Origin: Bispira polyomma
Lineage: Eukaryota
Direction: 5' to 3'
DNA: 64,000 nt
Assembly (NCBI GenBank): GCA_965649765.1
Contig: OZ287754.1
Span: 27,466,001-27,530,000 of the forward strand
Below, piece by piece: positions 3,208 through 62,472 of this stretch (position 1 is its first letter; every line of letters starts with the position of its first letter). The notes under the pieces are model-generated. The model was not told the DNA's origin and did no database searches. It was given only the letters and a program-made list of their open reading frames with translations. The position numbers and the translations under genes were made by a program.

Positions 3208-3236
3208 ATGTATACTTGAAGATGTATTAATTGTAT

Positions 3237-11858: not shown

Positions 11859-11870
11859 CTGAAAGTACAG

Positions 11871-34417: not shown

Positions 34418-35563
34418 ATGATGAATGCTTTAATCCGAAACATTAAAAGTATTAGTGCAATAGTTCTTGCATTGACTGGAGTAGGCTTGTATTTTGACAG
34501 CCACATGATTTTATTAGAGTCTTCGAAGGCGATGATATCAAAAGACAAGAGTGATGAAATTACAAGGACAAACTTGGCTATGAGTATGGAGTCTATCAAC
34601 AAGACTGTACATATTGCAATGTTAGTAACTGGAGATAAGTATGTGCACTACAGCCTGATGACAATGAAAGCTGTGTTGTTTTCCACTAAATGGTTTGTTC
34701 AATATTACATTCTGTCTGAAGATAATTCCACAGCAAAACTAAACCAAGAGATCGCCACCTGGCCAGCACATAGAAGGACTCAAGTGACTCTTGTGCCAAT
34801 CCAACTGAATTGTCCTGTGTTGTTACGGGAGACACTCTTCAGTCATCTACAAAGCAAAGCGGTGAAAATCTGTGCATATGAGACACTGGTATATTCACCA
34901 CTTATTTCCAAAATAACACTCAAGGTGATCTTCATGGATACAGACATGATGGCTTTTGATGACATCAGTGAGCTGTGGCATGTTTTCCAGCAGTTTGACG
35001 AACAACATACTATGGCTACGTCAATAGCTTTCATGTACAAAGTACAAAAGAGGTATACAGAGGCTAAAGGGGAAATCATGCAGGATGGCCACGGCATGAA
35101 TTCTGGTCTAATGCTCATGCACTTACAGCATCTGAGAGAAATGGCATTCATAGATGTTCTGATTGAGAGCAGCAACTTGCAGATGAGCGGTCTAAATCCG
35201 GTTGATGACCAAGATCTGCTGTGTCTGTATTTTCACCTTCGTCCTGAGCAGCACTACCCCTTGAACTGTGAGTGGAATTTCCTCCGACCAATGTTTCAAT
35301 GTGAAGACAAGGCCCGTGTCAACTGTAGCAAGGCCGAGGTACATGGCATACGGATGTACCATGCAACATCAGTTCATAAGTTTGAAACAGGGCCATTCAC
35401 TGAAATCTTTTCCTGTTTTGATAACATGAATTTTCATCAGCTGTCTAAATCAATGCAGTGCCTCGAAGTACATCTAATGAGATTTAAGAATTGTAAGTGT
35501 ACTGTGGGGAATAATAACTTGCTAATAAAGCTTGAAAACACACTTTCACTGAATCATCAGTGA
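34418..35563 (+). CDS. GXYLT-like GT8 glycosyltransferase, single coding exon, paralogue 2
   Basis: Intact 381-aa ORF with 38 substitutions versus paralogue 1 (hand count, ~90% identity). All GT8 motifs retained; AATAAA at 35698. Confidence 0.85.
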   Translation: MMNALIRNIKSISAIVLALTGVGLYFDSHMILLESSKAMISKDKSDEITRTNLAMSMESINKTVHIAMLVTGDKYVHYSLMTMKAVLFSTKWFVQYYILSEDNSTAKLNQEIATWPAHRRTQVTLVPIQLNCPVLLRETLFSHLQSKAVKICAYETLVYSPLISKITLKVIFMDTDMMAFDDISELWHVFQQFDEQHTMATSIAFMYKVQKRYTEAKGEIMQDGHGMNSGLMLMHLQHLREMAFIDVLIESSNLQMSGLNPVDDQDLLCLYFHLRPEQHYPLNCEWNFLRPMFQCEDKARVNCSKAEVHGIRMYHATSVHKFETGPFTEIFSCFDNMNFHQLSKSMQCLEVHLMRFKNCKCTVGNNNLLIKLENTLSLNHQ

Positions 35564-40227: not shown

Positions 40228-43200
40228 TTGCATCCCGGAGTAGCTCACATATCTGCTACCTCATTGGCTAAAGTTGCAAAAAAAAATTCATACTCTTGTT
40301 CATGTCGTAAATTTCCAACCACTGTTAATGGTAGAGGTCTTGTGTTGTTGCTCTTACTCGGCAGTGATGTGTCCCTTAACCATGGTCCTGTCATGCTCGG
40401 GGTGCTAAATGCTAGATCTGTGAGAAACAAAGGTCCATTTCTTGCTCATATTGTGACATTGCATGACCTCGACCTCCTCTGTGTTACTGAGACCCATGTC
40501 CGTCTATATGATACAGATAGCTTTCTACGGTCTGTTACTCCTCCTGATTTTGTGTTTTCTCAAATGCTTTATCCCTCAAGTATTGGTGACGGTGTTGGAT
40601 TCTTCGTCAGATCCTCCTTCAAACCACATCAAATAGAATCTCCTGTCTATCAGTCCTTTGAAAACATGATGGTGTCAATTGGCCTTCATAGCCGCTCGCT
40701 GTTGCTTGCCTGCGTCTATCGCCCCTCCCCAAGATCAAGTACTTGTAATTTATTAGAAGAATTCATGTGTTTTGTTTCCTGTCATACATTAACAGTTTGT
40801 ATCATATATGTGGTGACTTTAACATCCATGTTGATGCACCATTTGGTGACAGCCATAAATTTATGATCTTCCTTGATTTGTGTGAACTAAAACAGTCAGT
40901 TAGACAACCTATCCATCTGCATGGTCACATTCTGGACCTCATTTTATCTCCTTGTCATCAGGATACTATTGTAGATGTCAAAGTCTGCAATTTTATATCG
41001 GATCATGCATTAGTCAAATGCTCAATTGCTTCTCCCTGACAGGTGGCTCATATTCCTAATACAGTGCATTATAGGAGGTACCACCGTATAAACATGTCTC
41101 ACCTCCACACTGATCTCAAGAATACTTCCTTCGTTAAGTCACCAGCCAATTCTGTAGCCAAACTTTATCAACAATACATACATGACCTGGGCGATGTACT
41201 AGATAAGCATGCACCACTTGTATCTAGAATGTCAAAGAAAGATTCTGTGCATTGGCTTTCTGATTCATACCAACGGGATAAGTCTCTCAGGTGCCAATAT
41301 GAAAGAACTTGGCGAAGGGCCAAGAATCCATTGAATAGAGGTAGACTTCATTGCAAGATTGCCTGGTGCAATGTATTTGTTAACGAGGATAAGTCAGAGT
41401 ATTATAGCAAATCTATCTCCGACAACAGTCACAACTCCAGCTATGGCACGAACTGCACAAGACCCTTAATATGGTTACCAATGTGGCACTCCTGTCCAAT
41501 GAATCTAATAAGTCACTAGCTGACAAGTTTGCTTGCTTTTTTTCAGACAAAATTAAGAGAATTAGAGATACTTTTGTTGTTTCTGGAACTAAAATTGATG
41601 TTTATCCTCTTTCTGATCCTCCTGAAATTACTGCCATTACCAGAGTCTCTGTAGATGATGTTTATAAAATAATTAGTAGCTCGTCTACAAAATCCTGCAT
41701 GTTGGATCCATGGCCAACATCTCTCATCAAAGAATGTTGTGATATATTACTCCCATCCATTACAAAGCTTGTAAACTGCTCACTTACTGAGGGAGAGGGC
41801 CACGGTGGCCTAGTGGTTAGCAAGCATTGCACTTCACAATCACTGGTCTCTCACCTCTGGGCGGCGTGAGTTCGAATCCCGTCGGTGCCTATGTGGGAAA
41901 GGTGGTAGTTCTTTACTGTGGGCCGCTGGTTTCAGTGCAGAACCTTGACCGGCTGTATGCAGTGTTTCCTCCAGCGTTTCCAACTACCCGTCCCAATATA
42001 ACCTACTAAAAGGTACTAGAGTGGACGTTAAATATCCCAATTCAAAATTCAAAATACTGAGGGACATGTACCTGATGGTTTTAAAACAGCTGTGGTTACT
42101 CCTCTTATTAAGAAGGCTTCTCTTCCAGTTGACGACCTTAAGAACTATTGTCCTGTATCTGGTCTTGGTTTCATATCAAAACTGGTTGAACGTGTGGTTG
42201 CTAAGCAACTGTTAGATCATATCCTGGTCCACGACTTAGACAACCCATACCAGTCTGCCTATAAAACAGATCATTCAACTGAGACAGCTCTTCTGTCCAT
42301 AAAAAATGAAGTTCACCTATCTTTGTCAAGAGGCGAACTTACTGCGCTGGTATTGCTTGACCTCTCTGCTGCCTCTTACACCATTGATCATTCCACTCTT
42401 CTCAGTTGTCTTCAGACTTGGTTTTGGCTCTGTTCTTAAATGGTTCACTTCCTACTTAACTGATCGTTATCAGTCGATAAAAGTTGGCTCTACTTTGTCC
42501 GATCTTTGTAAACTCTTGTTTGGTGTTCCTCAAGGTTCAGTTTTGGGCCCTCTGTTGTTTTCATTGTACAATGCCCCTCTCAGATTGGTGATTGGCAAAT
42601 ACAAAGGTATTTAGTTCCATTTTTATGCAGATGATACCCAAAGTTATGTGCACCTATCCCATAAGAACACATCTACTGCCTTTGAACAGTTGAACAGGTG
42701 CCTTGACGATGTGAAAGAGTGGATGTCAACTGGTAAACTCAAACTTGATCCTGACAAGGCTGAGTTCATAATCTTTGGCTCAAAATGACAGAGGGAGAAG
42801 TTGAAAGCATGGTTTCCGGTTGACATCCTGCCCAGCTGATTCTGTAAAGAACCTGGGTGTATGGTTTGACTCTGACTTTTCCTTCTCTAAACACATCCAG
42901 AGTGTCTGCAAAAGTTGTTTTGTGCAACTCCATGATTTTGGACGTGTCCGGCGGTTTCTCACTTATGATGCTTCTATACTTGTGACCAATGCTTTTGTCA
43001 TTAGTAGACTGGATTACTGCAATTCACTTATCAGGAGTCTCTCAAAGTTTAATTTACGTAAATTACAATGCATTCAAAATAGTGCAGCTAGAATTGTGTC
43101 AAATACCAGTCGATACACCAGTATAACTCCTGTTCTTAGGAAATTGCATTGGCTCCCTGTTGAACAGCGTCCAGTGCTTAAAACAGCTACACTTGTATAT

Positions 43201-43613: not shown

Positions 43614-45715
43614 CCGGTTAGGTTTTCTCACAACACCCCGTGGACATATTATGGTGCTTACCCTGCCCCGCACCACCTAGTACCCGCAGGAGTTCGACCC
43701 TGCCGTGGAAACTTACTGGTGGCCGGTTGGTACTCTACAACCCGATAGCCCCCTTGTCAGGGTCTTGCCATGGCCTATTTACTTAGGCCAAACAATCAAG
43801 TGTAGAACTTTATAGTCAAGTAAACTGCCACCAGTTTAAATTTGGGCTCAACCAACAATTATAAATATATGCCCTCATCACCTGATTTCCGTAGTAGTAA
43901 TACTAGTTTAGATGTTCAAGTAAATGTGGTAGTTTGATAACTGAACATCGCCTGTTCTTTACACCTGCCGAGATAAACTGTAGAGTAGGAAAACATGGGA
44001 AAGATGAGACTTTTACAGCTTGTAATACAGAGCATAATAAAATACGATAATTTAGGATAAAAACCTATATTATTGCTTTTAATAATGTGGAGAGAAAGCC
44101 AAGCCTGTGCTTGGTCTGCCCTGATACCACATACCTAGTCTTGAAGTGTGGTCTGAACCATATCCTAGAACTCTAAGGTTAGAATGTTATGGGGGCATAT
44201 TTACATATAGGTTACCAATCAATCTAATGATCTAGTGATTAAAATAATTGTCGTAAAATTATCATACAGACCAATATAAATAAACATTACATGTATGTAT
44301 AGATTAAAATATTACAATATACGTGTCTACAATATGTACAATAATGTCACAAAATATAGCCCTGTGGTACCCAGCCCTACTGTTACCATACACCTTACCT
44401 AACCCATCATAATCGCTAATGATACTAGCGGTAATAATTCCACCAGGAGTGGTGACATTGAGGACATTACAGGAAGCTGAATCATGGCTGAAGCTGAGAT
44501 GCAGTTTGCCAAAATTTACCTGACTGTCCCAACTCAGGAGTACCCACCGCTAACGCTGTATCCCACCCGTGGATTTTAGAAAGGGAGAGAAAAAGGAATA
44601 ACTCAATGAAATGAATGTTTAATTAATGAATGATGTATAACTTTTCAATGGGTGCAGTGTTCCCTCCTGGCTACCTTCCTCAGAACCCTCACAGAAACTG
44701 CTTGTGAACAGGGGCTACCCTGGGTGAACTACCCCAGCCCAAGGACCCCTATCCCCAGTAAACATGGTAACAAATCACATATTAAAACTGATCAAAATCC
44801 AATAACTAACTTTATTTATTGCTGAATGGCAGATAATGCATTGGCTGCAGCACATTGCCCCTTGGCATCAAACCATTTATCAATCCATTTAAAAGGGCTT
44901 TTAATTAAATTCTTTGACAAAAGGAGTAGTGTAGAATGAACAGATGCCCCAAACCCCTTTTGGTATTTGTCTGTTAAATGTTCCATCAAACAATGAAAAA
45001 TGGCACTAAAGGGTATCATTATACCAATTCACCTTTATTTGAAAAAAGTTATATAATTGGGTCATCATCATAGGTTTGAATTCCATAAAGCAGACCATTT
45101 GCCCAAAGTCCCATGCCATTTGTCCAGAGCAGTTAGTGGCTATTGGATTCTAATACTTTCTCAGTGCGAACCGTTTGACAACGTACTCGAATGACACAAA
45201 AAATTCTGAAAAAAATTTTCTGACAATATTATTTCCCTCTGAAAGTTTGAAGAAATGAAGACTTACGAAATAGATGCTACAGATGAGAAGAAGGTGGAAG
45301 TGCATTCTGTCGGTCCTTTAGGAAATGGCAAACAGTTTGTATTTCCGATCAAGAGAATCTGTCCGGAGTTACACAGTAACCAAGATGACAACATGACTTG
45401 TCCTAACTGCTGTCGGCCTAAGAGGAACAAGGGAGAAGAAAAGTACAAACCGTTGAAGAAGAGGCTGTTTGACTCGGAGAAAGATTAATTTCCTTTTGAC
45501 TGACAATAATTTTTTTAATTTTTTGTTGTTGTTTTTGTAAAACGGTCATATGTTTTTTATTTGTAAAGAGACTCTTGGTATATAAAATATAAGTATTAAT
45601 TCTTGCAATATCTATTAAAAAAAAGCTCTCGAGCTTTGTTCGTTTAAACCCTGTACTTAAAAGCGAATAAAATTGGTGTGAATAATCATTTTTTGTTTTG
45701 ACTTGAAAGCGTTCA

Positions 45716-46322
45716 CTTGGCTTTAGTAAAGTTTGAATCACCCTCTACTTGGATTATCTTAGGTATTACCGGTTGTATAAGTTGTTGCAGTGCAAGGACG
45801 AGATGTTTGACGAACCTCCTTATAAAATCATTTATTGCTTTTCCGTGGGGACAAAACAAAATGTAAAAAAATTTAAACATAGATTTTTTGCAAGGGATGC
45901 CAACACCCAAAAAGGTCAAGGAAATATTTGACGGTCGTCACCACTTGATCTGTCTAGATGATTTGCAACAGGAAGTAGCCAATAGTAAAGAGGCTGAGAA
46001 ATTATATACCCAACTCATTCACCACAATAACCTCAGTGCAATTTATCTAAATCAGAATTTATACTATCAAGGCAAATTTGCCCGTACACTCAACCTAAAC
46101 ACAGCTTACAGCATTCTATTAAAAAATCCTAGAAATACCAAACATATAGCTCTGTTGGGACGTCAGTTGGGAATGGGAAAAGTCTTAAAAGAGGCTTATC
46201 GGGATGCCACGAGTAAACCGTACGGCTACCTGATTGTTGACATATCGCCCAAAAGCGATAAAAGCTAAAAGTTAAGAACTAATATTTTTCCCCATGAAGA
46301 CCCGTCGCTAGTATATCAATAA
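45716..46322 (+). pseudogene. Polinton packaging ATPase (A32-like)
   Basis: Walker B LICLDDL, HHNNLSAIYLNQNLY, TLNLN, KNPRN, LGRQ, AY.DATSKPYGYL. The Walker A GKT is missing after PSTWIILGIT, apparently through a small deletion. Confidence 0.88.
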
Positions 46323-46363
46323 GTGTTCTAAGCTCCCTCCGTTAGTCTCAACTACTGGTAGCT

Positions 46364-46980
46364 ATGAAGAAACAAGTCTCATAATTTGAAAAGAGATAAA
46401 ACCTTTTTTACCTTGTTAGTAACTACGGAACTTAAACAAGTGAGAGCATTATTGGATACCATTACTGTTAAACAGATGGAGGCCATTATCAAAGTTGTAT
46501 ACAATTTGATGAACATTTCTACTTCTAAACAAGACAGGGCTTTTTTTTTCGTAAAAGCAGAACGTTCCTGAAACAACTAGTGAATAAGAAAGTCAAAATA
46601 TCCAAAAAGAAACATCTGCTATCTAGACACAGAGTAAAATTATTGAAGACGCTTTTACACTTCAAGCGAAAAATTTTAAGCGTGTTAAAATGAAAAAACT
46701 GGTTTTGATCCCTTTTGAGAGATACAAAAACTTGATTTCTAGAGAGCCCACAAGCCGAAGATTTTAATAATTCTAAAGTTGAAGAGATAACTACCGGTCT
46801 TGGGGAGCCTACAGCCGAGGAACGGACAAAGCAGGCACAAGAACCAATTCTTTTGAACAAAAATTCCACCACTGCCCGGGGAACCCGATCTATCAACTCA
46901 AACCTGTAGTGGACTCTCCCAAAAAAGAAAAAAGCCGAGGTTGAAAGATATATTGTGGAAGGAAAAGTGGAAGCCATGTT
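46364..46980 (+). pseudogene. Polinton small accessory ORFs between ATPase and integrase
   Basis: KQVRALLDTIT..AIIKVVYNL..KKVKISKKKHLL, then MKKLVLIPFERYKNL; position and motifs are typical of Polinton small ORFs. Confidence 0.55.
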
Positions 46981-46992
46981 AAAGGATTCGTA

Positions 46993-49900
46993 ATGTTAAC
47001 TCCTGACAAAGAAAGTTATTTGAAAGAAATATATTTCAATCCCAAGCAACCCACTTTGTTTGCCGGGGCAGATAAGCTGTATAACTTTGTAAAATCCCAA
47101 GGACAAGATTTTTCTAAAGGAGATATATTAAAATGGCCGAGCAAGCAAAGCGTATACACTATTCGGAAATTATTCGGAAAGAGCTATTTGAACCTTGAAA
47201 GGAAAAATTGGGAGATATATGGTCTATAACAAGTCGAGATCGACGCTCTCCAGGATATTACGGACAGTTACAATAACACACACCATAGAACAATTAAGAT
47301 GTCTCCAAAAGAAGCCCTCTTAACTGAAGACCCGATTCTCTGGGAAGCTCAGTATGAGAAACAAGAGGAAGTGACCTTGCGGTCACAAATCTCGGAGACA
47401 TGAATCTATTTTTTAAGCTGTCTGCCTAAGAATTGAATATATTATACACTGTATTATTATGCCATGTTGGTTCAATGGCCGCGTACCAGACGTTTGCTGT
47501 GGATTCCGAAAATAGTGACCCAGACACTAATTGGCGGTCAAAATGGATTCCGAAAACGATCTATACTGCTTGTGGTCATAATTCGGCCGCCTGTCATAAA
47601 TCGGCCATCATACAAAAAATGTCATAAATTAATTAATTTTTTTTGCCTAACAATATTGTAATTTCTTCAATATTAGTATTGTAATGGTTTTACTTGAATC
47701 TTATAGTCCATTTTGTACTAAGATTGTCAATAATTACCACTTAAAATGTGACGGCCAATTTAAAACTGGCAGCCGAATTATAACCAGAGGCAGTATGTAT
47801 AGTTGCTAGGAACTTCCGTTATCGCCCATTACATTGTATTATTATGCCATGTTGGTTTAATGGCGGCGTACTAGACGTTTGCTGTTGATTCCGAAAATAG
47901 TGACCCAGTCACTAATTGGCGGTCAAAATGGATTCCGAAAAATTCCGTTATCGCCCATTACTCAAATCTGTGGTAGCAATATATAAATAGAAACGAAACT
48001 TTGCGAAGCTCATTTTACATAAACCATTGAAAAGTGTGACTTCAAAATTCGATGCATTTCAATATGATTCATATTTTATTTCTAATTTTATTTGATGTTT
48101 TCGCCACCATAAAGTTGTGGTTATATATTGCTGGGAAATCCCGACCTACTGCGCACACACTTATGCATTTACTCATGCGTATTGAAGACGTCCCCAAATT
48201 TCAGCCAATCCCAACTCGCCTAAGATTAAATTAAGTCGGACACCATATTGGAGTATTCTTTACTACTATTTACAAACAGAGATCGACCAATAGAAATCGT
48301 TGTTACAGAATAAAGTTTCAGATGGGGCGAGTTCCTGATTGACGGATTAAAAAATCAATTAATATCATGTGAGAATCTGTTATTTACCACAAATATGGCG
48401 GTTTCGGAAGCAACTGAAATCTCGCAAACTAAAGAAATTTTGATGGAATAAAGCCACTATATGAGCAGGTAAGGTGAGATTCTGTCAAACTTTCAAATAA
48501 TAATAATGTTTTTATTAAATTAAGACAAGTTCTTGGCTTTTTGCTACTTCTCGCCCATCGTTTTAAAATATAGAATTTATCTTCTGTTTAAGGTTTTCCT
48601 TGTACACAAATAAAAGACTGTAGGGATGGCGTCGTCTAGCGGTCGAGACCAAAGTTAGAAAGTGTGCGTTCTCGTAAGCTAGAAGCAAAATTAAAAGAAA
48701 TAACTTTTCCCGTCAGTATGGGTGTATATATATCGTATATATCTATCCCAAACCCTAGTCTTTGTCACATATATATACCTATTGAAACCTACGAATCTGA
48801 CTGGCCCCATGGAAAATGGACATAACAAAATATGCGGTAATTGGGAGGTCAAAAGTTAAATCTTATTTTACAAATAAAATGAAAAATAGATATATTAATG
48901 CTTCTGACTCGTCCTTAGTACCAACCACATGTAACTGCAGAAAACTGAATTAAAATAATGGACAAAACTGGTAGAAAGTGCTGTCTACAGACGAAAAAAC
49001 TTCCATCTCCTACATGATCTTGGCGGGCTCCGCCCTCCGACATAACAACCGAAACAAATTAAAGAAAAAAACAAGAGGAGAATGGCCTGGCGGCCATATC
49101 ATGATAATGCCACCACATGACTACAAAGCAAGTTACTGACGAGTCTGGAAATAGTGAACCAGTCACTAGTGAGCGATCGAAATGGATTTCGAGAACCATC
49201 TACTGTGGGTACCCAGTTAGGTAAACCAAAGGCAAAATTCAAAGTAAAATCTGAAACATATGTATAAACAACCGAATTGCCTTAAAAAATGTTTTTATAA
49301 TTTATTTTTCACATAAGTTTGGTTTAAAACCTGATAAAAACAATTTTTTATATATTTTGGAAGCTTACAAAAGTTGGTTTGTTTACCAACCAAATTATCG
49401 GGTTTTTGACAGCTCTAGAAATGACCAAACCATAATTTATTTTCCAATTTTAACATTTTCATTTTTAGCTGTTATAGCTTGCAAAACATCCGAAATTAGT
49501 CCGAAGTTAGTGTACCACTAGTTACTATCCCTATAGACAAAAGAAAGTACTAGTCATCAGTACAGAAGCCACTATAGCACCCAAGTTTAATCCAATTACA
49601 GATTTTTTTTACTAAACTGTCACTGTTCTATGCACAAACATTTTACAGGTATTCATAGATTAACTATTTTAGTCACACTTTTAGTCATTTTATAGTCTTT
49701 ACAGCCACAACTACCCATTAACCAAAGTATGTATATATATGTTATATATCTTCCCAAACCTAATGTTTGTCATGTATATATATTTTCCTTTTGAAACCAT
49801 TTGAAATGGGTTGTGATGGAACCTTCAATCAAATCTGAGGACCCCAACATTTAAAACTTGAATAACTTCATCTATACTGCATATAATCACACCAAATTAA

Positions 49901-50290
49901 TTTTGGACAAACTAGAGACCAAAAAGTGTATATGTACGAAATTTAAGAGCACAATTCTTTACAGATTCAGAGATTACCCTGTGGACACGTTGTAACCATG
50001 CGTAACCAAGGTTCTTTCACTATTCCCTTTCTCCAGGAAAGCATGATTATGCCAATAAGCATTGGCATAATCATGCAACAAACCAAAATCGTCTAAACAT
50101 GAAAAATAAAAAAAAACCCTTTTGTTTGAAAGTAGGCGACGTAGTGAGGCTATCGAAATTACCAGGCAGTAACCATAAAAAACAGATAAAAAGTGGACAA
50201 ATGAATTGTTTACAATGGCATCGAGAAGTATCAATCAGGGTTTTCCTAAATACGAAGTCAAACACTTTAGCAACGAGCCTAAAAGAGATA
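46993..50290 (+). pseudogene. Polinton retroviral-like integrase: core deleted, split by ~2.7 kb of inserted repeats
   Basis: N-terminal LKEIYFNPKQP..FAGADKLY, then LQDITDSYNNTHHRTIKMSP (~47270), then C-terminal KVGDVVRLSK (~50130). Confidence 0.8.
47566..47793. mobile_element. Tc1/mariner-type MITE with TA target duplication
   Basis: TIR ctgcttgtggtcataattcggc / gccgaattataaccagaggcag with ta on both sides. It lies between 107-bp direct repeats at 47450-47556 and 47835-47941. Confidence 0.7.
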
Positions 50291-50309
50291 AATTTTCGGA
50301 CGTTCTGAT

Positions 50310-50960
50310 TTTTTGAACGTTCAGAATGCTTGGATCTATCAAGAAGCAGATTAAAAGTCAAATTGAGAATTCTTGAGAATGACAATACCCCCATCACCAA
50401 AGACAACAGTGTAGGACTGGTGAACCTAAGTCTAGCTTCAATATTTCAACAGGTAGACGTACAGTTGCAGGAAAAGCTAGTTAGTTCCGACATAGGCATA
50501 TGCTATCCATACAAGGCGATATTAGATGTTCTGCTCAAATACTGCTTTGATGTGAAAGAAGGACTACTACAAAGCGAACTGTATTACAAAGATATTGGTG
50601 ACATGGAAGCAACCCGTCCAGGTAACAATGATGGTTTACTAAATCAGACAGCATTCAGATCTATTCCAACAAGAGAGGCTTATCCTGAATGGGGTAAAAG
50701 TAGCCCTGAAATGTCATTCCTCTGCACTGATGACTCGTGACTCCGAGGATTATAAAATTTCAAAATGTTTTTAAAGCCTGTCACGTGAATGTCAGTGATG
50801 CGGTAATACTTGCTCAGAATGAACTTGTGAAGATATCTCCAGCACTCTATCCTTACTGGATCTTATCCTCTCTCAAAACAATATCGTTTCCTAGCAGTGT
50901 TTCTTCTGTGAACAGTGACATCTTTAATAGTCAAGTTCCTAGCAGAATATGCAGCAGGAT
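50310..50960 (+). pseudogene. Polinton major capsid protein (double jelly-roll) fragment
   Basis: LDLSRSRLKVKLRI..VGLVNLSLASIFQQVDVQL..YPYKAILDVLLKY..LQSELYYKD; later ALYPY and DIFNSQVPSRI. Confidence 0.82.
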
Positions 50961-51009
50961 ATTCTCTGTTTTGCTTTGTTGTTCAAGGCGAGGCAACGGT
51001 TTTTTTAAC

Positions 51010-51480
51010 TTAATGTCTGACTTTCAAAGCACTCACCCTTTCTCCCAATATATTTTGTCCAGGATAATTTTTACTTTTTAATAAAACAACCACGTCGTAA
51101 TCTTCTCCCCAACCTAAGTACCAGTCTTTAGAGGCATACGCAATTTCTTCAAACAGGAAACTGTCTAACAGTTCGTTAAATTCATTACATTTGACGTATT
51201 TATCTTCCAGCGCCTGTTGTAATAGTTCTGACAATTCTACGTACCACGACACTTTAATTTAAATGTTCTTTTGAAATTTGCGAATGTTAGCCACAGAAGT
51301 CTCTCTATGAATTAGTAAAGCATCGGCTTCGCCCTGGTGATATTTCACTTAGTTGTAAGCTAAAAAATGTTCTACAGATCCAAACTGTAACTTGTCGTAA
51401 AATAATGGATACAAATACGAATTGCAAATGGGATTCACGCTCTCATCTTTGAATATGTAACGGTTAAAGTCGGGCTGAAG
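51010..51480 (-). pseudogene. NADAR (YbiA-like) domain, in frame with the C-terminus of the Polinton pPolB
   Basis: F..NPICNSY..F.SVEHF..W....L..AL.DKY..F.ELL..IAYASKDWYLGWG..YPGQNILG, with two TAA stops. Confidence 0.78.
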
Positions 51481-54400
51481 ACACAGAACCAAATCTAAAG
51501 GCGAGGTATGGATACCGTTATTTGCTACTTTTTTCTTGCAATAAAAACAATTGAAGCCAACTTTTTATTGACTGTAAGTATACATGGTATTGTCTTTGGC
51601 TCTAAAACCTTGATTGATACCAGCCTGCTGCATTTGGGTTTCTAGTACCTTATTCAATATATTCATAGGCTGAATCTCTTGTTGATACCCTTGCATGACA
51701 GCTTAACTTGACCTTGTCTTTCAATCACGTACGGTTTGGAGCACAGGGCGACCATATTACTTCCCGTCATTTCTTTCTTAAAAAGCCTTACCGTACGGCC
51801 GTCAAAGAGGGCGTCTGCATGACAACACTGGCGCGGGAAATATGTTTCTCAGTCCGCTAAATGCTTTTGTCCGCATTTAAGTAAAATTTTATTTTCAAAT
51901 TCTTCTCTTAAATGGGATAAACCGCTTCTGCAAGAGTTTTGTGAGAAAGAGCAAAATACAAACTGTTGGTGTCCATTTGTACGCATTCAAATTTGTTTCT
52001 GGGTATGTACTTGCACAAATTGTCGTAGTAGAATGGAGCATTCTCAACTTAGCTCAGCTCAAAATGAAGAACCCGATTTGTATAGGGACATTCAGGTTTT
52101 TCTACCTTTTTGCACATTCAAACTCGTACATATCATCTCCTAACCAAGTAGCTTTGCGAAACTCAGGCTTGTTAATGGCTATTTTTGCTGAGGTATGACC
52201 GTTGAGCTAAGATATTTGTGAAAACTTTTCTTTGTTCATAATAGTACTACCATATCCGCTATTTGCAACATTCTTAAAAGTATCCCGCACAGTTTCAGAT
52301 CCGAAGATTAATCCGCCTTTCTTCTGGCGTTAGAACACTTCTCCACAAAGTCTGAAAAACAAGCCACCGGGGTAAATTCGATGATCTCATACAAGTTACT
52401 TACGACTAAACCGAGATTCAGATACCACTACAACAGAGGCGTAGTTAACATAATTTTATGGGCTTTCCTGCCTCCTACTAATAAATGTCTATCTTTGATA
52501 GACAAATCATGAAAGATAGTGTGTTGCAGCATATGTCTGCCAATGATGCCCATTGGTACGCCAGTTGTACAAAACAAAAGGGAACATTCTTTGAAATAAA
52601 TGAATGGTGGCAAATCACTGTCAAAGTCTCCACTCCACTCATTTCCAACAGCTCAATCTACTTCAGCGATTCCAAAAACTTCGCCCGAGCGAATAGCTTT
52701 TAACAAGGTATCTGTACGCAGTCCGCTTTTATGCTTTGAGTATAAGTTGGGTAGATAGCGATCGCTTATATTTTCAGTAGTACTTTTAAAGATACTTTTG
52801 AACTGACATTCCCAAATTTCATGCATGGTGTAACCCAAACTTTCTAAATGTTCTTTTCGTAAAATAGTTCTCCTGCATCTACCTTCTTGCTGTTTGCACC
52901 ATTAGGGAAACTTTTTTGCTTTTAACGGTGACCGTACAGGAAATACATGCGTGAACCGACAACCTTAACTATAAAGGTCCATGCCGCAAATCCCGTTGAC
53001 GTAAAAGCCCATAACGTAATGCTCTTTGCCCAAATTTAACTATTTTTTTTGAGTTTGATATTTTATTCATCCAGATATACATGTCCAAATATTTGGTTTG
53101 GATTTTAGGTTTGAAATTATAACGGGCTTTTCAGCAAACAACGGCTCTGCACGGTTGATCGGACGCGAGACAGAAACTATAAAGACTATTCGCATCAAAG
53201 CCAAAAATTCTCTGACAAAATTCTTCGCCATTTTTTAAAGTTCGTCCAACTGACATCTTTCTTGTTAAAACTATGGAAGACCCCCCTGTGATATTTTGTT
53301 TTATTTTTCTGTACAAATCTTCATTTCCTTATTGAATAAAGCAAATTTTGCCTCTTCGGAATGGGAAAGCATTTCCCTTGCAACGCCTGGAACAGATATT
53401 GTGTCCTTAAACAAATCAACGTTATTGTCTATATAGAATTGTTGAAGGTTAGTAACTGCTTCCGTAAAAGGGTCGATATCTTTGAGGTTGTAGTAAATGA
53501 GAAAATCTTTTATTGTCTGCATGCGCTGATCCTTCCATACTTTTAGTAAGTCTACATAGTTTTCAAGTCCGCTGAGGGGTTTGCCACTACAAACGCATGA
53601 TATCTTTCCACAATAGTTACATATTTCACTTTCAGATACGGATAAATCTAAATAAACCAAATGACAATATTTCTCAACTTTTTCTTCTTTACATTATATA
53701 TATGATTTTCCTAATCTTGAGTTTTCAGTTTAATATTATGATTTTCATGCCACAAATGGAGTTCCTGCTCTCAAACATTACATTTTTTTAAACTACTGTA
53801 AAAAGTTTCATAAGGCAGCAATTAAGTTTCTTCGAGGACGGAGGGCTCTCAAAAATATTCATAACAGAAGAAGCTTTTTGAGTCTTTTGCCTTGTAGCTT
53901 TTTAAAAATTGGACGTAAGAATACCCGGGAGCGATGTACTGACTAATGTCTTAAAAGTTGAGAGTTGATGTACTTATAGTCAAATAGCTATTGTTCTTTT
54001 TCACTGTAAATGACTTTGTTTCAGGGTCGGATAAACCTAAATGTTTACAAAGTTTAGATTTGATCAGATTTAAAATGTACTTGGAAGAATTAAAGCCCAG
54101 AACGGGTACATTGCTGCAGTAGAATTCCAAACGAGCTTTTAGGGTCTCAATTGTTTTCAATATAGTTTTTCTAAACCTTTCTCTGGGCATTAATAGGACT
54201 TTGCTATCTAAGTTTTCATTGTCCTCAGTCTCGTCAATTTCACTATCCGATTCACCTGAGTCCTTATCCAAACTAGAATTAAAGTCATGGTATTCCAGTC
54301 GCAATTCATTGCAGTTCTTTAAGTGCGTCATCATTTTGACAAAGCTATTGCCCATGTTAACCCTGTTTTTAAATTTTTTCAAAGGCGGTTCATAATCTAC

Positions 54401-54810
54401 GACTTCTAAAGGTCCAATTTGCAATACACTGTCGAAATCAGTCCTTTTATTACAAGATTTGGAAGATATAAAAGGGTTGTCAGACTTTTCCAATGGTATG
54501 ACATCTTTAAATTTTTGACTTACTTGGTCCAGCCTTTCGAATGCCCATGCAAATTTGTGTTTTTCAATTTTAGTAACTTTTTTTGAGATCTTATTCATGT
54601 AAGCAACCATTTAAGTAATGTGTCTAAATTGAAATCGACCAGGCAGACACCTTTTTCGAATTCGAGAACGATTGACCCTATTCCTATTGAAACTGGTAGA
54701 TGTTTGGTCTTCCAGACTAATTTTTGGGTATTTACAGGTTCCTTTCTTTCAAACATTGCCTCAAAATCGAATGTTATAAAGTAAGAAAAAACCTGATGAA
54801 ATATTAATGG
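51481..54810 (-). pseudogene. Polinton protein-primed DNA polymerase B (pPolB), fragmented
   Basis: ExoI FDFE, ExoII GFNSSKY, ExoIII YYNLKD, motif A FDANSLY, VSR-like insert (FYVNG..IWECQF), motif B KNVANSGYG, motif C QMDTNS, C-terminal GINQGFR..KKKVANNGIHTSPLDL. Confidence 0.9.
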
Positions 54811-55073
54811 ATTTTGAATTTGAATTTGGATATTTAACATCCACTCTAGTACCTTTTAGTAGGTTATATTGAGACGGGTAGTTTGAAACGCTGTAAGAAA
54901 CACTGCATACAGTCGGTCAAGGTTCTGCACTGAAACCAGCAGCCCACAGTAAGGAACTACCATTATTCCCACATAGGCATCGACGGGATTCGAACTCACG
55001 CTGCCCAAAGGTGAGAGATCAGTGATTGTGAAGCACAATGCTTGCTAACCATTAGGCCACCGCAGCCCCCCTC
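54811..55073 (-). mobile_element. Full-length tRNA-derived SINE (same family as 41795-42054), no TSD
   Basis: The reverse complement aligns end-to-end with the 41795 SINE. Confidence 0.92.
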
Positions 55074-55074
55074 T

Positions 55075-57271
55075 ATAAAGTACTCAATTATTTTGGTTTC
55101 TGTGAAAATTTCATTACCTGGATAAAACATTTAAACAGAGATATAAATGCATATGTAATACAATGGGGAGTTTTATCTAATCCAATACCGGTAGAAAGGG
55201 GCTGAAGACAAGAGACCCAATTGCTCCGTATCTTTTTTTGTTGGTAGCCGAAATATTAAGCTTTCTCATTCAGAAATCTTCAAACATTAAGGGCCTCCAA
55301 ATTGGAAAAGAGATTTATAGGCTCACACAATTTGCAGACGACACAACAATGATTTTAGATGGCAATGTAGATTCTTTGCAGGCAACTTTGAATGTTTTAG
55401 AAATTTTTGATAATCTGTTGGGCCTAAAAATAAATACTAAAAAAACTCAACTTGTCTGGATTGGTAGTAAAATTGGTTCAAAAGAAAAATTGAAAGTTAC
55501 ATCAAAATTACACTAGGGGAGTCCAAGTTTAATCTTTTAGTAGTAACATTTTCATGTGATTTGTCTGAAATACCATGTTTGAACTATAAAAAAGCATTGA
55601 CAAGAGCAAACACACACTCCAATCATGGAGATTCGGATACTTGACACCGACTGGAAAAATCACAATTATTAAGACACTAATATTATCAAAATTTATCCAC
55701 TTGTTCTCATCAATCCCAACACCAGTTGAGATTCTAAATGACATCAACAATCTTTTATTTAAATATATATGGGATGGGAAACCAGACAAGATAAACAGAA
55801 AACAACTGTGTAAAAACAATCTACAGGGGGGCTAAGCATGGTTAATATATATAATTTTGAAAAATCTTTGAAAGTAAGTTGGATAAAGCGTATGATTTCA
55901 GTAAGAAAAAAAAAACTGGTTCATCCTCCTTAAACATGTAGCTGGAGATCTAACAAAATTATTTACTCTAGGGGTGAGTGGTGTACTACTATAATATCAA
56001 GATTAAACCCATTTTGGAAAATAGTTCTTACTTATTTTAAAGAACTTTGCAAAATTTCAAAAGTTCACACTACTCAAGACATATATTGCAGCAGTATTTT
56101 GTTCAATAGCCATATTGGTACGGATAAACTTTTCTTTCCAGATTGGTTTAAGCATGGTATTTATGTTATTGGAGATATTGTAAACTTAAAGGGCTGTATC
56201 TTAACCTTAGAAGAGATCAAGTTTCGGTATAACTTCCCAATGAATATTGTTAACTACATTACGGTAAAACATTTTGTTTAGCCAGTTTTACTGCAAAGTG
56301 CGAAAAATATCGCCTGTCTTTTTCTAAGACCATATATTCCATTTGATATAAGAATTTGAGTAAACTCCCACACCGGAACTAAAAATATTTTTTTAAAGAT
56401 GCAAGAATTATGTAACAATTTACCAAACAATGAAACAAAATGGCATTTTAAATACTGAAAAAAATTCAAACATATTGAGAATAATATATAAAGTTTTTTA
56501 TATTATAAATGATAAAGGATTTATATGGTTCCAATACCGAATTTTACATAGAATTTTAGGGACAAAAGAATTGTTATTTAAAATAAAACTGTCTGATAGT
56601 GATCAATGTAGGCTGTGTAATCCGAATACTGAATTGATGGTACACTTATTTTTGAAGTGCATCAAATCAAACATGTTATGGAATAATGTAACATCCTGGA
56701 TTGAATCAAAACTCGGAATTCAAGTCAATTTGAAAACATCTCTCAAAATATTAGGTACTTTAGAACAAGATTAAAACTTTTGGCCACTAAATTTTATCTT
56801 AACAATTTCGAGGCATTATATTTTTACAAATGCCAAAAAAAAAAAAAACAACAGAGATCTTAACATATATCATTTACAAAAAATTGCTGAAACAAAATAT
56901 TTTGAACAGGAGATGTTGTCAAAAGTTAATAATACATATAAGGGATTTAAAAGAAAATGGTTGACATGGCATGCTATCTTTTCAGAATTATTATTGTAAA
57001 ACTTTTACAGAAATAAAATTAGAAGAATTGTTATACTTGTGTAAGAGTATTGCTTTTTGCCTATATATATAAATATATGTATGTGTGTTTGTAGATGTAC
57101 TTAGGCAATTTGATGTTTTGCTCTTTTCAAATGTAATAAAATGACTATAGAAAATTAGTAATTGGCAATTAATAACGTGATTCTGTTTTCTCACTACGGT
57201 TGAATTTGTGTCATATTTTTGACTTGTATATATGTAAACCAAAAAAGAACAATAAAAAAAGTAAGAAAAAA
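55075..57271 (+). mobile_element. L1/Tx1-like LINE, 3' half of ORF2 with A-rich tail
   Basis: DPIAPYLF, QFADDTT, GLKIN..KT, LT..GKITIIKTL, C-terminal CRLC...E...HLF..C knuckle, aataaaaaaa tail. Confidence 0.88.
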
Positions 57272-59479
57272 CCTTTCCTTTACAGGCACTCGAATGCCGT
57301 ATTTTTCAAGTTTTTTAAAGGTGTTTTAGTTGGCTTGATAAAACCCCCCAGGAAATCTTAACTTGGTCACTTTGGAACTATGCAAATAATGTGCAGATAG
57401 TTGGTAATGTTTCCTAAATAATCTGTTACATTTGCTGCACTGAAACCTCTTTGCGTGAAGATCTATATCCTTAATTTAGGACAGGTGGTTTTCTTGTAAA
57501 TCTAAATACAAACTGTCTTTAAATTTACTGACTGGTTTATAAATACTGGACACACATCGGTTTTCAAGCAACTTGAAAACTGAAATATTAACCTGAAAGC
57601 AGTTTAACCAGATCTGGTAAATCGTCCATACTGTTAACATCAATACGAAGGTCAGATTCTTTTATGAAGGCGTTAAATAATATTTTATAATTTTTTTTTA
57701 TATTTCTTCAAGGCGGTATAAAAATATTAAATATATACAATTTTAAAAAGCTGTTAAAGTAAGTTGGATTAAAACAAATTACTCCATCAAGCTCTTAGTG
57801 GTGAAAATTATTTAATTATTTATTTACAAACATTGACTAAATTATAACCTTTGCTAAAAGGTGGTGTGATACAATTTTTAAAAAAAAATCACAACCAGTT
57901 TTGACACAATGTTCTAGAATATTGTGTTTTTACTTGCATTTGTTATAACTCGCATATTTTTGATAGCCCTACATTTTTTTGGTACAAAAGTAGAATATAT
58001 ATAAAAGGGAATATCACTGATTTAAATAGAGAAATTTTCACTCTTGAATGGATCAATCGTAAATTAACAAAAAAGAAAGCAAAACGAAAATTTGGGGAAC
58101 CAAAAAAACCACTCTATTCAATTAAATTTCAAACCGATAGATTTAATAAAATGTGGGTACTGTGTGAAAACATGTTTACTGGCATAGACATTTAAAAAAA
58201 ATATTAGAAAAAATTTGAGGTTTGAACCAAGGCTTCGTTGTTTTTTTTTAAATAATAATTTCTGCATTTCTTTTGTTATTTGAAAAATTTCAATAAACCT
58301 GTATCTTTTATGAATGAGAATTTTGTATAAATCAATATACAGTGTATTGGAATGTAACTGGGTTAACCTATGCATGACACCAAAATGTAACTGAGATTGA
58401 TTCAGTGACAATTCAAATGTGTACAGATTGAAACTTTTTATATGCTTAGTTAAGTGGAAACGGTCTTTTTATGTATGAGTGCATGGTAAAAATAGACTTA
58501 TCAAGCTTAAAGTTTAAAAGATTAAACCATTCAAATGTTCTTGATCCTGGATATTGCTTAGGTTAACGTTGACATGAAGCAGACACTACAGAAGACACAT
58601 AATAATACTAACAATACATATGTACAAAAATAGGTCAGCATATGTATACATGCCAGCTTCTAACATAGCATGTGAATTATGTTAGTAACATAAATATAGG
58701 CTTAATATATAACATAAAAGTAACTTTAAAAAGTACAATATTTATTTACCTACGTTATTTGGTAACTATGGGTATAAAACATAATATTTCGTGTGTATTG
58801 CATAATTCAAAAGCTAGAATGTATATATTTCAAATATGCAAGCTTCAAGAGAACATTAGATACGAAACTAACAAAAGACTAAAATATAATGCACATACAT
58901 ATAGTAGAACCCCCAAGGGACCACACAAAAGCAATCGACCAACACGGTACATTTGGTCTAGTTGGGACCACAAATTCACTTCCAGTTAATGGGACACTTG
59001 CCTTAACAGTGTTTCATTTAAAGTGGTTCAACTGCAGACAACTTAAAGTGAAGGAACCTTAACAGGTAGGTACTTAAATCTAAACCTGTATAGCCTGAAA
59101 AAGAGTACTCATAAATATTCATTTACCAAGGTAATTCAATAACTATTGGCAACTATAAAGCTATAGATGTGAAGGGTTAAGGAATTGTACTATGTTGTAA
59201 GTATGTATTTGTAGACAACTTTAACTTGAAGGTTAACACATAAAAGCTGTATTTACTATACATTTCAAGGAACAAGGAACTGACATGTGTTTGCAAAATA
59301 TGGTTTTAAAGACACTGTTTTACTTAAAGGGCTATACTGGGTATATTGAAACAAATATGATTATACATAGAATTAAACAAAATTTAAGAACATACATAGG
59401 ATTAAATAGACTGATATAAAACATCAGCGAGAGCTATATTAATAGTCACCATCAAACAGTTTTAATGTTTTCGCCATTT

Positions 59480-62010: not shown

Positions 62011-62472
62011 TCTGGAGTCCATGCTTTTTTCACCAAACACCCACCTCTGAGCAATCACCACCACGCAGTTTTCACAGTGGAGGGCAAGGAATTCACAAGC
62101 TCAGAGCAGTATATCATGTATAAAATGGCTTTACACTTTACAAAGACCAGGAGACGACTGAAAAAGTATGCTCCATCAGATCTAAGAAGGATTAAACAAC
62201 TGTCCAAAGCTGTACAGGTTTTCAGGTAGCCTGCATGGATTCAAGTAGCCTCGGACTACATGTTCGACGCAATGTATGCAAAGTTCAACCAGAATGAGCA
62301 TCTGAAAAAACTCCTTTTATCTACTGCAAGAAATACCTAGGTTGAAACAAATCCTTTCAATACGACATGGCCAGTTGGCTTATCGTTAAGCAACAGGGAT
62401 ATTTTTGATTCAACAAAATGGACAGGCAAAAACTTGGCTGGGAAGACACTTGAATGTATAAGACAGAAATAA
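62011..62472 (+). pseudogene. NADAR (YbiA-like) domain in the ORF1 C-terminal position of an L1/Tx1-like LINE
   Basis: AFFTKHPPLSNHH..FTVEGKEFTSSEQYIMYKMALHF..IKQLSK.V..W..MFDAMYAKFNQNEHLKKLLLST..VETNPFNTTWPVGL..WTGKNLAGKTLECIR, with two TAG stops. Confidence 0.88.

What the first reader, a model, noticed from the sequence alone, without database searches (positions are those of the whole stretch)
51010..51660. Polinton DNA polymerase B fused in frame to a C-terminal NADAR domain
Seen: the minus-strand frame from 51660 reads ILNKVLETQMQQAGINQGFRAKDNTMYTYSQ*KVGFNCFYCKKKVANNGIHTSPLDL, the usual end of a Polinton pPolB. It then runs on with no stop or frameshift into VLCLQPDFNRYIFKDESVNPICNSYLYPLFYDKLQFGSVEHFLAYN*VKY...W...ALEDKY...IAYASKDWYLGWG...YPGQNILG. 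The ORF track shows only the last 80 aa because of decay stops. Established: these motifs (SN, S.EH, KF, D..WG.G, G.N.LG) define NADAR/YbiA, and NADARs are the antitoxins that remove ADP-ribose from guanine in DNA modified by DarT1. Inference: the element tethered a de-ADP-ribosylase, or an ADP-ribose reader, to its replicative polymerase to clear replication-blocking adducts. The conserved E of LVEA is replaced by Y, so catalysis is uncertain. I do not know of this fusion being described.
Basis: partly seen in the sequence, partly recalled or inferred. Interest (0 to 1): 0.9.

Follow-up and report, generated by a model that had tools for sequence, protein, structure and literature searches.

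The report
Polinton-like polymerase with NADAR tail
A dead copy of a virus-like DNA element carries a replication polymerase with an ADP-ribose-processing-type (NADAR) domain fused to its end; intact relatives elsewhere show the fusion is a real inherited trait that I found no paper describing, though its active site is altered and its function is unknown.

Summary
On the minus strand, the tail of a protein-primed family B polymerase (pPolB) runs in one frame, with no frameshift, into about 160 more codons (51489-51010). The stretch has three internal stops.

The window's own pieces barely reach NADAR in Pfam (E 0.05). They match a profile of their relatives at E 1e-18 to 1e-24, and 19 of those relatives match Pfam NADAR (best 1e-28). 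Three relatives are uninterrupted ORFs of 988, 800 and 624 aa that run from the polymerase motifs through the same junction into NADAR. A model of the 988-aa protein matches phi29 polymerase plus the NADAR structures 2B3W and 8BAU.

Of 110 relatives, 93 stop exactly at the tail and 14 run on at least 90 residues past it. The fusion therefore marks a minority of lineages and is not a deletion artefact.

The YbiA-type glutamate survives in 1 of 26 fused domains. The window's clade has also replaced three further ADP-ribose contacts, so canonical de-ADP-ribosylation is doubtful there.

The window copy is thoroughly decayed. No paper in the searched library joins NADAR with Polintons. I rate it a new variant of a known kind with unproven function.

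The parts
51010..57604 (-). Remnant of the pPolB-NADAR gene, given as one part from first base to last. It contains a nested foreign insertion. It is broken by roughly two dozen in-frame stops and several frame changes, and its N-terminal part is missing.
   Evidence: tblastn of intact relatives and of N-terminal ORFs of related loci, outer bounds and counts only. The KxY polymerase motif can be read directly.
51010..51489 (-). C-terminal extension after the polymerase tail: a short linker plus the NADAR domain, ending at the terminal stop. It is in the same frame as the tail.
   Evidence: One search gives the frame. The C-terminal piece matches Pfam NADAR at E 0.051 in the right register (84-157 of 163) and TIGR02464 at E 0.087. 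The profile of relatives gives E 1.5e-18 and 6e-23. The best database relative is 45% identical at E 1.7e-12, and 19 relatives fall in PF08719.
51490..52239 (-). C-terminal palm and thumb region of the polymerase, up to its usual end.
   Evidence: tblastn of P0021 and P0025 and of the L003 ORF with motif C, KxY and tail, at 50-78% identity. Most listed relatives end at this tail; 93 of 110 in the tally.
54812..57241 (.). Foreign DNA nested in the polymerase gene. It comprises a 257-nt repeat (54812-55068, an inverted copy of 41797-42053) and a LINE-like reverse-transcriptase fragment on the plus strand (55238-56774).
   Evidence: the repeat finder, 91% over 257 nt. Pfam RVT_1 at E 5.6e-05 and zf-RVT at E 6.8e-09. 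The polymerase match resumes at 57242-57604.
45686..50949 (+). Remnants of the other element genes, convergent on the polymerase: an ATPase-like ORF (45963-46319), the integrase N-terminal part (46909-47163), a chromodomain part (50179-50364) and a capsid-like gene fragment (50321-50949). The protease gene and most of the capsid-like gene present in relatives are absent. Unrelated DNA lies between the integrase and chromodomain parts.
   Evidence: blastn to L002 and L004 at 63-78% identity. tblastn of L004 ORFs. In L004 and L002 the rve domain is above the Pfam gathering score.
62011..62469 (+). A second, separate NADAR remnant. It is not part of the fusion: no polymerase tail precedes it and it has in-frame stops.
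   Evidence: Profile hit at E 2.3e-07. Its three pieces hit Pfam NADAR collinearly at E 7.3e-06, 1.5e-06 and 4.7e-05. tblastn of P0012 gives 28% identity at E 9e-11.

Best explanation
SHOWN. The window holds a decayed copy of a Polinton/Maverick-like element spanning at least 45686-57604. [quoted passage not shown] The fusion is a heritable trait of a minority of lineages in this polymerase family. The junction lies at the same aligned position in all of them, which points to one capture of a NADAR gene. Intact relatives keep polymerase and NADAR in one uninterrupted ORF.

INFERRED. The domain was captured as a working NADAR, that is, a hydrolase that cuts ADP-ribose off nucleobases. Tethered to the replicase, it met adducts on the element's own DNA or on factors at the fork. 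That would be a counter-measure to host ADP-ribosylation, much as invertebrate RNA viruses embed NADAR or macro domains in their replicase polyproteins and T4-like phages carry orphan NADARs against DarT1.

Since the capture, the site has been remodelled. The YbiA-type Glu is kept in only 1 of 26 fused domains. The window's clade has also turned the Lys, Arg and Trp that hold the ADP-ribose phosphates into hydrophobic residues. In that clade the domain is therefore most likely a retained binding or altered-specificity module, not a canonical guanine de-ADP-ribosylase.

The copy in this window does nothing now.

I put about 0.9 on the shown part and about 0.3-0.4 on the inferred counter-defence origin.
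For: Frame and junction in the window.

Family assignment:
- Window pieces against the profile of relatives give E 1e-18 to 1e-24.
- Relatives fall in Pfam NADAR: 19 of 23 alignment members, best 9.7e-29.
- P0012 matches 8BAU at E 1.9e-12 and YbiA 2B3W at 7.7e-07.

Continuous ORFs:
- An L003 ORF runs from motif C through the tail into the first half of NADAR.
- P0137 (988 aa), P0139 (800 aa) and P0149 (624 aa) carry the polymerase motifs and NADAR above the gathering score.

Fold: the P0137 model (pLDDT 81.5, pTM 0.74) matches phi29 polymerase (E 8.6e-09), 2B3W (TM 0.64) and 8BAU (TM 0.61).

Distribution: 93 of 110 relatives end at the tail and 14 run on at least 90 residues past it (13 of these align as NADAR). 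The fused forms come from at least four assemblies or samples, plus one protein held by JGI (P0027).

Same junction in all fused lineages: alignment A1.

Residue counts: mapped through the 8BAU alignment and the residue roles in PMC11543638.

Precedents: NADAR in RNA-virus replicase polyproteins (PMC9503650), phage orphan NADARs against DarTG1 (PMC11257639), and guanine-DNA ADP-ribosyltransferases in butterflies and clams (PMC11209040).
Against: - No activity was tested, and none can be tested with these tools.
- The Glu125 position holds Tyr or Phe in all 17 relatives of the window's clade and Glu in only 1 of 9 others. Lys50, Arg93 and Trp133 are lost in the window's clade. Mutating the Lys50 equivalent abolishes activity in the E. 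coli C7 enzyme (PMC11543638).
- The NADAR part evolves faster than the palm and thumb in the same pairs (19-56% against 41-75% identity).
- No host ADP-ribosyltransferase was sought or found, and the host species is unknown.
- The rough tree does not resolve the fused lineages as one clade.
- Most loci hold broken copies. Whether any element with the fusion is complete is unknown.
Confidence: 0.45

Rival explanations
1. The fused domain is a pseudo-enzyme. It keeps the NADAR fold as a structural or docking module of the polymerase, for example to bind a partner protein or DNA, and has no role in ADP-ribose chemistry in any living lineage.
For: Four of the ADP-ribose contacts are replaced by hydrophobic residues throughout the window's clade, and the Glu is lost in 25 of 26 fused domains. 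The domain diverges faster than the polymerase. The fold is kept at high model confidence.
Against: Several fused lineages keep Lys50 (7 of 9), Arg93 (6 of 9), Trp133 (8 of 9) and Asp130. One keeps the complete set. An Asp two residues after the lost Glu is present in 13 of 26 domains. This recalls the shifted Asp that does the catalysis in DarT1-associated NADARs (PMC11543638), so a moved acid cannot be excluded.
Confidence: 0.3
2. The domain acts on ADP-ribosylated proteins or on soluble NAD-derived signals, not on DNA adducts. [quoted passage not shown]
For: Iyer et al. [quoted passage not shown] Related elements also carry BIR/RING (IAP-like) host-manipulation genes.
Against: The only activities shown for NADARs are on nucleobase N-glycosidic bonds and riboflavin intermediates (PMC11543638, PMC11125620, PMC12945103). 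The same loss of phosphate-binding residues argues against any ADP-ribose substrate in the window's clade.
Confidence: 0.12
3. The in-frame junction is an accident of decay in this one copy, such as a deletion that joined a polymerase remnant to an unrelated NADAR gene, or the NADAR likeness is chance.
For: The window's own pieces give only E 0.05-0.09 against Pfam NADAR and TIGR02464, and similar weak hits to PipA/GtgA. Most relatives of the polymerase do stop at the tail. A separate NADAR remnant lies 11 kb away.
Against: The same junction is found in uninterrupted ORFs from several independent assemblies. The window pieces match the family profile at E 1e-18 to 1e-23. The second NADAR remnant is only about 28% identical to the fused type and has no tail.
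Confidence: 0.02

Closest known systems
Polinton/Maverick protein-primed PolB (domain order TP-vOTU-EXO-PALM; PMC11161782)
   Same: A phi29-type fold, with polymerase motifs A, B, C and KxY plus exonuclease motifs. It is encoded beside an rve integrase, a weak adenain-like protease and other element genes. It carries an inserted endonuclease-like domain, a kind of insertion already reported for polinton pPolBs.
   Different: It has an extra C-terminal NADAR domain of about 160 residues after the usual end. This is not part of the published domain order, and no paper in the library joins it with Polinton terms. TP and vOTU were not tested here.
NADAR domains embedded in replicase polyproteins of invertebrate RNA viruses (nido-, hepe-like and picorna-like; PMC9503650)
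   Same: A NADAR domain made as one polypeptide with the replicative polymerase of a virus-like parasite of invertebrates. The proposed role is to undo host ADP-ribosylation.
   Different: Those are RNA viruses with RNA-dependent polymerases and cleaved polyproteins. Here the carrier is a DNA element with a DNA polymerase and a terminal fusion. The survey states that outside RNA-virus polyproteins viral NADARs are typically standalone.
DarT1-NADAR (DarTG1) antitoxins and orphan NADARs of T4-like phages (PMC11543638, PMC11257639)
   Same: The same domain superfamily. The idea is shared that a mobile element carries a NADAR to protect its replicating DNA from guanine ADP-ribosylation.
   Different: No DarT-like partner gene was seen in the ORFs scanned. 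The fused domains resemble eukaryotic YbiA-type NADARs (best solved relative 8BAU), not the BC4488 type. Their key residues are largely replaced.
pPolB-helicase fusions (Tlr1-like pPolB-S1H; Oxyrrhis marina SF1H-pPolB; PMC5499653, PMC12721341)
   Same: An accessory enzyme domain fused to the pPolB of Polinton-like elements. The fusion is found fragmented in most endogenous copies and recognised through a few long ORFs.
   Different: The partner there is a helicase with an obvious replication role. Here it is a NADAR domain with no known replication role.
E. coli YbiA / plant riboflavin-pathway N-glycosidases (2B3W; TIGR02464)
   Same: The same fold (TM 0.64 to 2B3W) and a weak TIGR02464 match in the right register.
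   Different: The family-defining Glu is missing in 25 of 26 fused domains, and there is no riboflavin-pathway context.

Membership tests
NADAR superfamily (Pfam PF08719) | Significant match to the family profile over the whole domain | tested here: met
   The window's own pieces alone fall below threshold (E 0.051, 14 bits against the 35.1 gathering score). They match a profile of relatives at E 1.5e-18 and 6e-23. Those relatives match PF08719: 19 of 23 alignment members, best 9.7e-29, with P0137, P0139 and P0149 above gathering. Membership is therefore by transitive homology.
NADAR superfamily (Pfam PF08719) | NADAR/YbiA fold | tested here: met
   Tested on a relative, not on the window copy. 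The AF2 model of P0137 (a member of the window's clade) has block-mean pLDDT of 79-97 over the domain. Foldseek gives 2B3W at TM 0.64 and 8BAU at TM 0.61 over 174 columns.
NADAR superfamily (Pfam PF08719) | Catalytic and ADP-ribose-contact residues (8BAU numbering E43, K50, R93, E125, D130, W133; PMC11543638) | tested here: not met
   window's clade, 17 relatives:
- E125: 0 Glu (Tyr 13, Phe 4)
- W133: 0 Trp (Leu 15)
- R93: 0 Arg (Leu 14, Val 3)
- K50: Lys in 2 of 12 rows with a residue
- E43: Glu or Asp in 10 of 11 rows with a residue
- D130: Asp in 11 of 17
- W89: Trp in 16 of 16 rows with a residue

The window copy has Glu, Tyr, Leu, Leu and Asp at the E43, E125, W133, R93 and D130 positions. 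A shifted acid (Asp at +2 in 13 of 26) cannot be excluded.
NADAR superfamily (Pfam PF08719) | Hydrolysis of ADP-ribose-nucleobase bonds | not testable with these tools
   This is a biochemical property. Nothing computed here shows it.
[quoted passage not shown] | Exonuclease and polymerase motifs plus a phi29-type fold | tested here: met
   Motifs A, B, C and KxY can be read in P0137, P0139 and P0149 and in the L003 ORFs. KxY is readable in the window. Foldseek puts phi29 polymerase first (E 8.6e-09, probability 1.0, about 700 columns). Pfam DNA_pol_B_2 is only weak (E 0.037 on a window piece, 6.6e-05 on an L002 ORF), though it is precomputed on several relatives.
[quoted passage not shown] | Terminal-protein priming domain and TPR insertions | not tested
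   The N-terminal ORFs gave only weak zinc-finger hits. No structural test was made.
Polinton/Maverick elements | pPolB together with a retrovirus-like (rve) integrase | tested here: met
   rve is above gathering in L002 and L004 (E 3.9e-09 and 1.1e-09), with a chromodomain. The window keeps an integrase remnant (48% identity to L004).
Polinton/Maverick elements | Adenain-like cysteine protease, packaging ATPase, and double jelly-roll major and minor capsid proteins | tested here: inconclusive
   Peptidase_C5 is only E 0.0068, below gathering, in L004. The ATPase-like and capsid-like ORFs have no Pfam or PHROG hit. Their folds were not modelled. The protease is absent from the window copy.
Polinton/Maverick elements | Terminal inverted repeats and target-site duplication | tested here: not met
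   The only long inverted repeat in 40000-64000 belongs to an unrelated repeat inside a LINE-like element. The window copy is truncated, so this says little about the family.
DarT1-NADAR toxin-antitoxin (DarTG1) | Adjacent DarT1 ADP-ribosyltransferase gene, and BC4488-type catalytic Asp and Lys | tested here: not met
   No transferase family was hit among the ORFs scanned in the window or in L002 and L004. The best solved relative is the eukaryotic YbiA-type 8BAU. There is no acid two residues before the Glu position.

The most novel reading that the evidence does not exclude
Marine invertebrates use nucleobase ADP-ribosylation of DNA, by pierisin/CARP-1-type enzymes, as a defence against integrating Polinton-like viruses. 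A lineage of these elements answered by welding the reversing enzyme to its own replicase. The remodelled active sites of the fused domains would then record an arms race over the chemistry of the adduct.
Probability: 0.12. Interest if true: 0.85.

Novelty: new variant of a known kind. Interest (0 to 1): 0.62.

Why it matters
Eukaryotic NADARs have no established physiological role (PMC11125620). Animal enzymes that ADP-ribosylate guanine in DNA, such as the pierisins and clam CARP-1, have no established target in nature.

A NADAR domain kept on the replicative polymerase of a virus-like element across several deep lineages is a natural pointer to DNA or replisome ADP-ribosylation as a battleground between animal hosts and DNA parasites. 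It also adds a domain to the catalogue of Polinton polymerase architectures, and it gives a sequence marker for a sub-lineage of these elements.

The window copy is dead, so the value lies in the family and not in this locus.

Tried and rejected
1. Direct scans of the window's pieces against Pfam, NCBIfam, PHROGs and PDB sequences. NADAR reached only E 0.05-0.09. Equally weak or slightly better hits went to the PipA/GtgA family (E 0.003-0.007). I treat those as chance, because the same piece matches its true relatives at E 1e-12 to 1e-18 and those relatives are NADAR.

2. The word-based protein search with the 82-aa piece found nothing. This reflects its length band. The exhaustive search then found 13 relatives.

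3. A second copy of the fusion in the window: none.

4. Terminal inverted repeats: none that belong to the element.

5. PDB sequence search with the 988-aa relative found no polymerase. The fold search did.

6. A neighbour-joining tree of the last 194 polymerase residues does not resolve whether the fused lineages form one clade. I draw no conclusion on gain versus loss beyond the shared junction.

7. The deletion-artefact reading is rejected.

8. A DarT-like partner gene was not seen in the ORFs scanned.

9. Sample accessions: only one could be placed, in a marine biofilm metagenome. The host of the window remains unknown.

10. Pieces were searched apart.
Full report
**Observation**

A polymerase tail ends at 51490. 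It is followed, with no frameshift, by 159 more codons and a terminal stop at 51010-51012. The stretch has three internal in-frame stops, so the ORF list shows only the last 80 aa. The window holds no second copy of this sequence.

**Is the extension a NADAR domain?**

The tools take no read-through protein, so I searched the pieces apart.

- The C-terminal piece reaches Pfam NADAR only at E 0.051, though in the right register (profile 84-157 of 163). It reaches TIGR02464 at E 0.087.
- Equally weak hits go to the PipA/GtgA family.
- The junction piece hits nothing.

On its own this would be inconclusive.

The exhaustive protein search with the C-terminal piece found 13 relatives (best E 1.7e-12, 45% identity). 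Pfam places them in NADAR, with P0012 at 9.7e-29. P0012 also matches the solved NADAR of Phytophthora nicotianae (8BAU, E 1.9e-12) and E. coli YbiA (2B3W).

I then built a profile from relatives only and ran it over all 2031 six-frame pieces of the window. It hits the finding's pieces collinearly, at E 1.5e-18 and 6e-23 for the NADAR and junction pieces. Apart from a separate NADAR remnant at 62011-62469, nothing else in the window is hit. The domain assignment therefore holds by transitive homology.

**Is the fusion real?**

- Several relatives carry the same polymerase tail running straight into NADAR.
- In locus L003 a single uninterrupted ORF runs from polymerase motif C through the KxY motif and the tail into the first half of NADAR.
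- A search with that ORF gave 338 relatives. In the tally of the listed ones, most end exactly at the tail, and a minority run on for the length of a NADAR domain. Among the 110 that cover the region, 93 end at the tail and 14 run on at least 90 residues. One of the 14, P0082, does not align as NADAR.
- A search with the polymerase core found P0137 (988 aa), P0139 (800 aa) and P0149 (624 aa). All three are uninterrupted ORFs with motifs A, B, C and KxY, the tail, and NADAR above Pfam's gathering score.
- In alignment A1 the junction sits at the same columns in every fused lineage, and 19 of its 23 members hit NADAR.
- The fused forms come from at least four assemblies or samples. P0027, held by JGI under the name 'ribA/ribD-fused uncharacterized protein', adds a fifth source. 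One of the samples is a marine biofilm metagenome.

Many do stop there, but a distinct minority do not.

**Fold**

An AlphaFold2 model of P0137, built with 45 aligned relatives, has mean pLDDT 81.5 and pTM 0.74. Foldseek against the PDB puts phi29 DNA polymerase first (E 8.6e-09, about 700 columns). For the C-terminal domain it finds YbiA 2B3W (TM 0.64) and the 8BAU NADAR bound to ADP-ribose (TM 0.61). The protein is thus a phi29-type protein-primed polymerase with a NADAR fold at its end.

**The element**

The window matches loci L002 to L004 at 63-78% DNA identity, from about 45686 to 54171. Protein-level matches extend the polymerase gene on the minus strand to 57604. Related copies encode:

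- an rve integrase with a chromodomain;
- a weak adenain-like protease;
- ATPase-like and capsid-like ORFs with no family hit;
- BIR/RING genes.

This is a Polinton/Maverick-like make-up, although the capsid genes and terminal repeats were not shown.

The window copy is dead.

- The polymerase-NADAR gene has roughly two dozen in-frame stops and several frame changes.
- It carries one nested insertion of about 2.4 kb: a LINE-like fragment plus a 257-nt repeat.
- Its N-terminal part is missing.
- The integrase is a fragment, separated from its chromodomain part by unrelated DNA.
- The capsid-like gene is truncated and the protease gene is absent.

**Active site**

I mapped 8BAU residues onto P0012 through the alignment and took the residue roles from PMC11543638. 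I then counted states by column.

| 8BAU position | Window's clade (17 relatives) | Other fused lineages (9) |
|---|---|---|
| E125 | Tyr 13, Phe 4 | Glu in 1 |
| W133 | Leu 15, no Trp | Trp in 8 |
| R93 | Leu 14, Val 3 | Arg in 6 |
| K50 | Lys in 2 | Lys in 7 |
| E43 | mostly kept | Glu or Asp in 5 |
| W89 | kept | Trp in 8 |
| D130 | mostly kept | Asp in 6 |
| the two Gly (134, 136) | mostly kept | Gly in 7 each |

The window copy agrees with its clade at the positions its pieces cover.

An Asp two residues after the lost Glu occurs in 13 of 26 fused domains. DarT1-associated NADARs use a shifted Asp for catalysis (PMC11543638), so a moved catalytic acid cannot be excluded.

The NADAR part is less conserved than the palm and thumb in the same pairs (19-56% against 41-75% identity). 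Even so, it is retained as open frame in deep lineages.

**Mechanism**

Shown: one polypeptide, a phi29-type polymerase plus a NADAR fold, inherited in a minority of lineages.

Inferred: the domain was captured once as a working nucleobase de-ADP-ribosylase that travels with the replicase. That would be a counter-measure to host ADP-ribosylation, by analogy with three precedents:

- NADAR and macro domains in the replicase polyproteins of invertebrate RNA viruses (PMC9503650);
- orphan NADARs of T4-like phages against DarT1 (PMC11257639);
- guanine-DNA ADP-ribosyltransferases in butterflies and clams (PMC11209040).

In the window's clade the phosphate-binding residues are gone. There I think a binding or altered-specificity role is more likely than canonical hydrolysis.

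Rivals are a pure structural pseudo-enzyme, a protein or soluble ADP-ribose target, and an artefact. The artefact reading is refuted.

**Comparison and novelty**

The published Polinton pPolB organisation is TP-vOTU-EXO-PALM, with homing-endonuclease insertions (PMC11161782). Known pPolB fusions are with helicases (PMC5499653; PMC12721341). Surveys of NADAR state that, outside RNA-virus polyproteins and plants, the domain is usually free-standing.

No paper in the searchable library joins NADAR, YbiA or DUF1768 with Polinton, Maverick, pPolB or adintovirus terms. The library is incomplete, so this is absence of evidence. I rate the finding a new variant of a known kind.

Left out:

- I did not scan the viral-contig collection or look up further contigs of relatives, because I could not tell whether the bar on fetching animal viruses covers them.

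Slips:

- To search the pieces apart, I worked out piece bounds. These coincide with stops. I passed them to tools and wrote two of them into notebook entry 1.
- The script printed stop-to-stop piece bounds outside the finding's region, including those of the second NADAR remnant. I then used those bounds.
- Loci L001 to L007 were fetched by protein look-up before I weighed that bar. They are contigs of genome or metagenome assemblies that carry relatives of this element, and their hosts are unknown.

No repaired, joined or consensus sequence was built.

Noticed in passing
window 62011-62469 (+): A second NADAR remnant with in-frame stops, not preceded by a polymerase tail. Its three pieces hit Pfam NADAR collinearly. 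It is only about 28% identical to the fused type. It could be a decayed host NADAR gene or part of another element.
   Followed up: partly
window about 52650-52840 (-); P0139 residues 167-210; L002 7753-9189: A restriction-endonuclease-like domain lies inside the polymerase between motifs A and B, with a weak Pfam MTES_1575 match (E 0.004-0.006). Endonuclease insertions in polinton pPolBs are reported (PMC11161782), but this one was not characterised.
   Followed up: partly
L003 1761-2387; L004 773-1222 and 16524-17132; L002 16835-17248: Related elements carry BIR genes, and in L003 a RING gene as well (IAP-like). BIR is above the Pfam gathering score (E 3.1e-15). No such gene was seen in the window copy.
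   Followed up: partly
L007 1-2076 / 2033-4999; L005 5656-7449 / 7468-8802; L006 3182-4549 / 4568-5953; L002 5806-7749 / 7753-9192: The polymerase is split at a conserved place into two long ORFs that abut or overlap: a 44-nt overlap in L007, an 18-nt gap in both L005 and L006, and 3 nt between the listed ORFs in L002. The exonuclease motifs fall on both sides of the boundary. This could be a short intron, a programmed frameshift or shared decay.
   Followed up: no
L004 7328-7993 (-) and 10001-10372 (+): Two copies of the element lie tail to tail, with their NADAR ends facing each other and mirrored gene orders on either side.
   Followed up: no
window 51010-51260 (-): The C-terminal NADAR piece gives weak hits (E 0.003-0.007) to the PipA/GtgA/GogA family of Salmonella effector proteases in Pfam, NCBIfam, PHROGs and PDB 6GGO. 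I take these as chance and did nothing further with them.
   Followed up: no
window 5657-6802 (+) and 34418-35563 (+): Two intact, closely similar 381-aa ORFs of glycosyltransferase family 8 (Pfam E 8.8e-15 and 1.3e-15). They are probably duplicated intronless host genes.
   Followed up: partly
window 41797-42053 and 54812-55068: A 257-nt repeat, 91% complementary. One copy lies inside a LINE-like element (RVT_1 hit at 42092-42436). The other is nested in the polymerase gene.
   Followed up: no
window 10876-15023 (-): A run of long minus-strand ORFs (214-314 aa) with no Pfam hit at E 0.001. By eye they resemble a retroelement. This was not verified.
   Followed up: no
window about 3100-3400: A run of N (262 in the window) shows as X in ORFs. 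It was left as it is.
   Followed up: no
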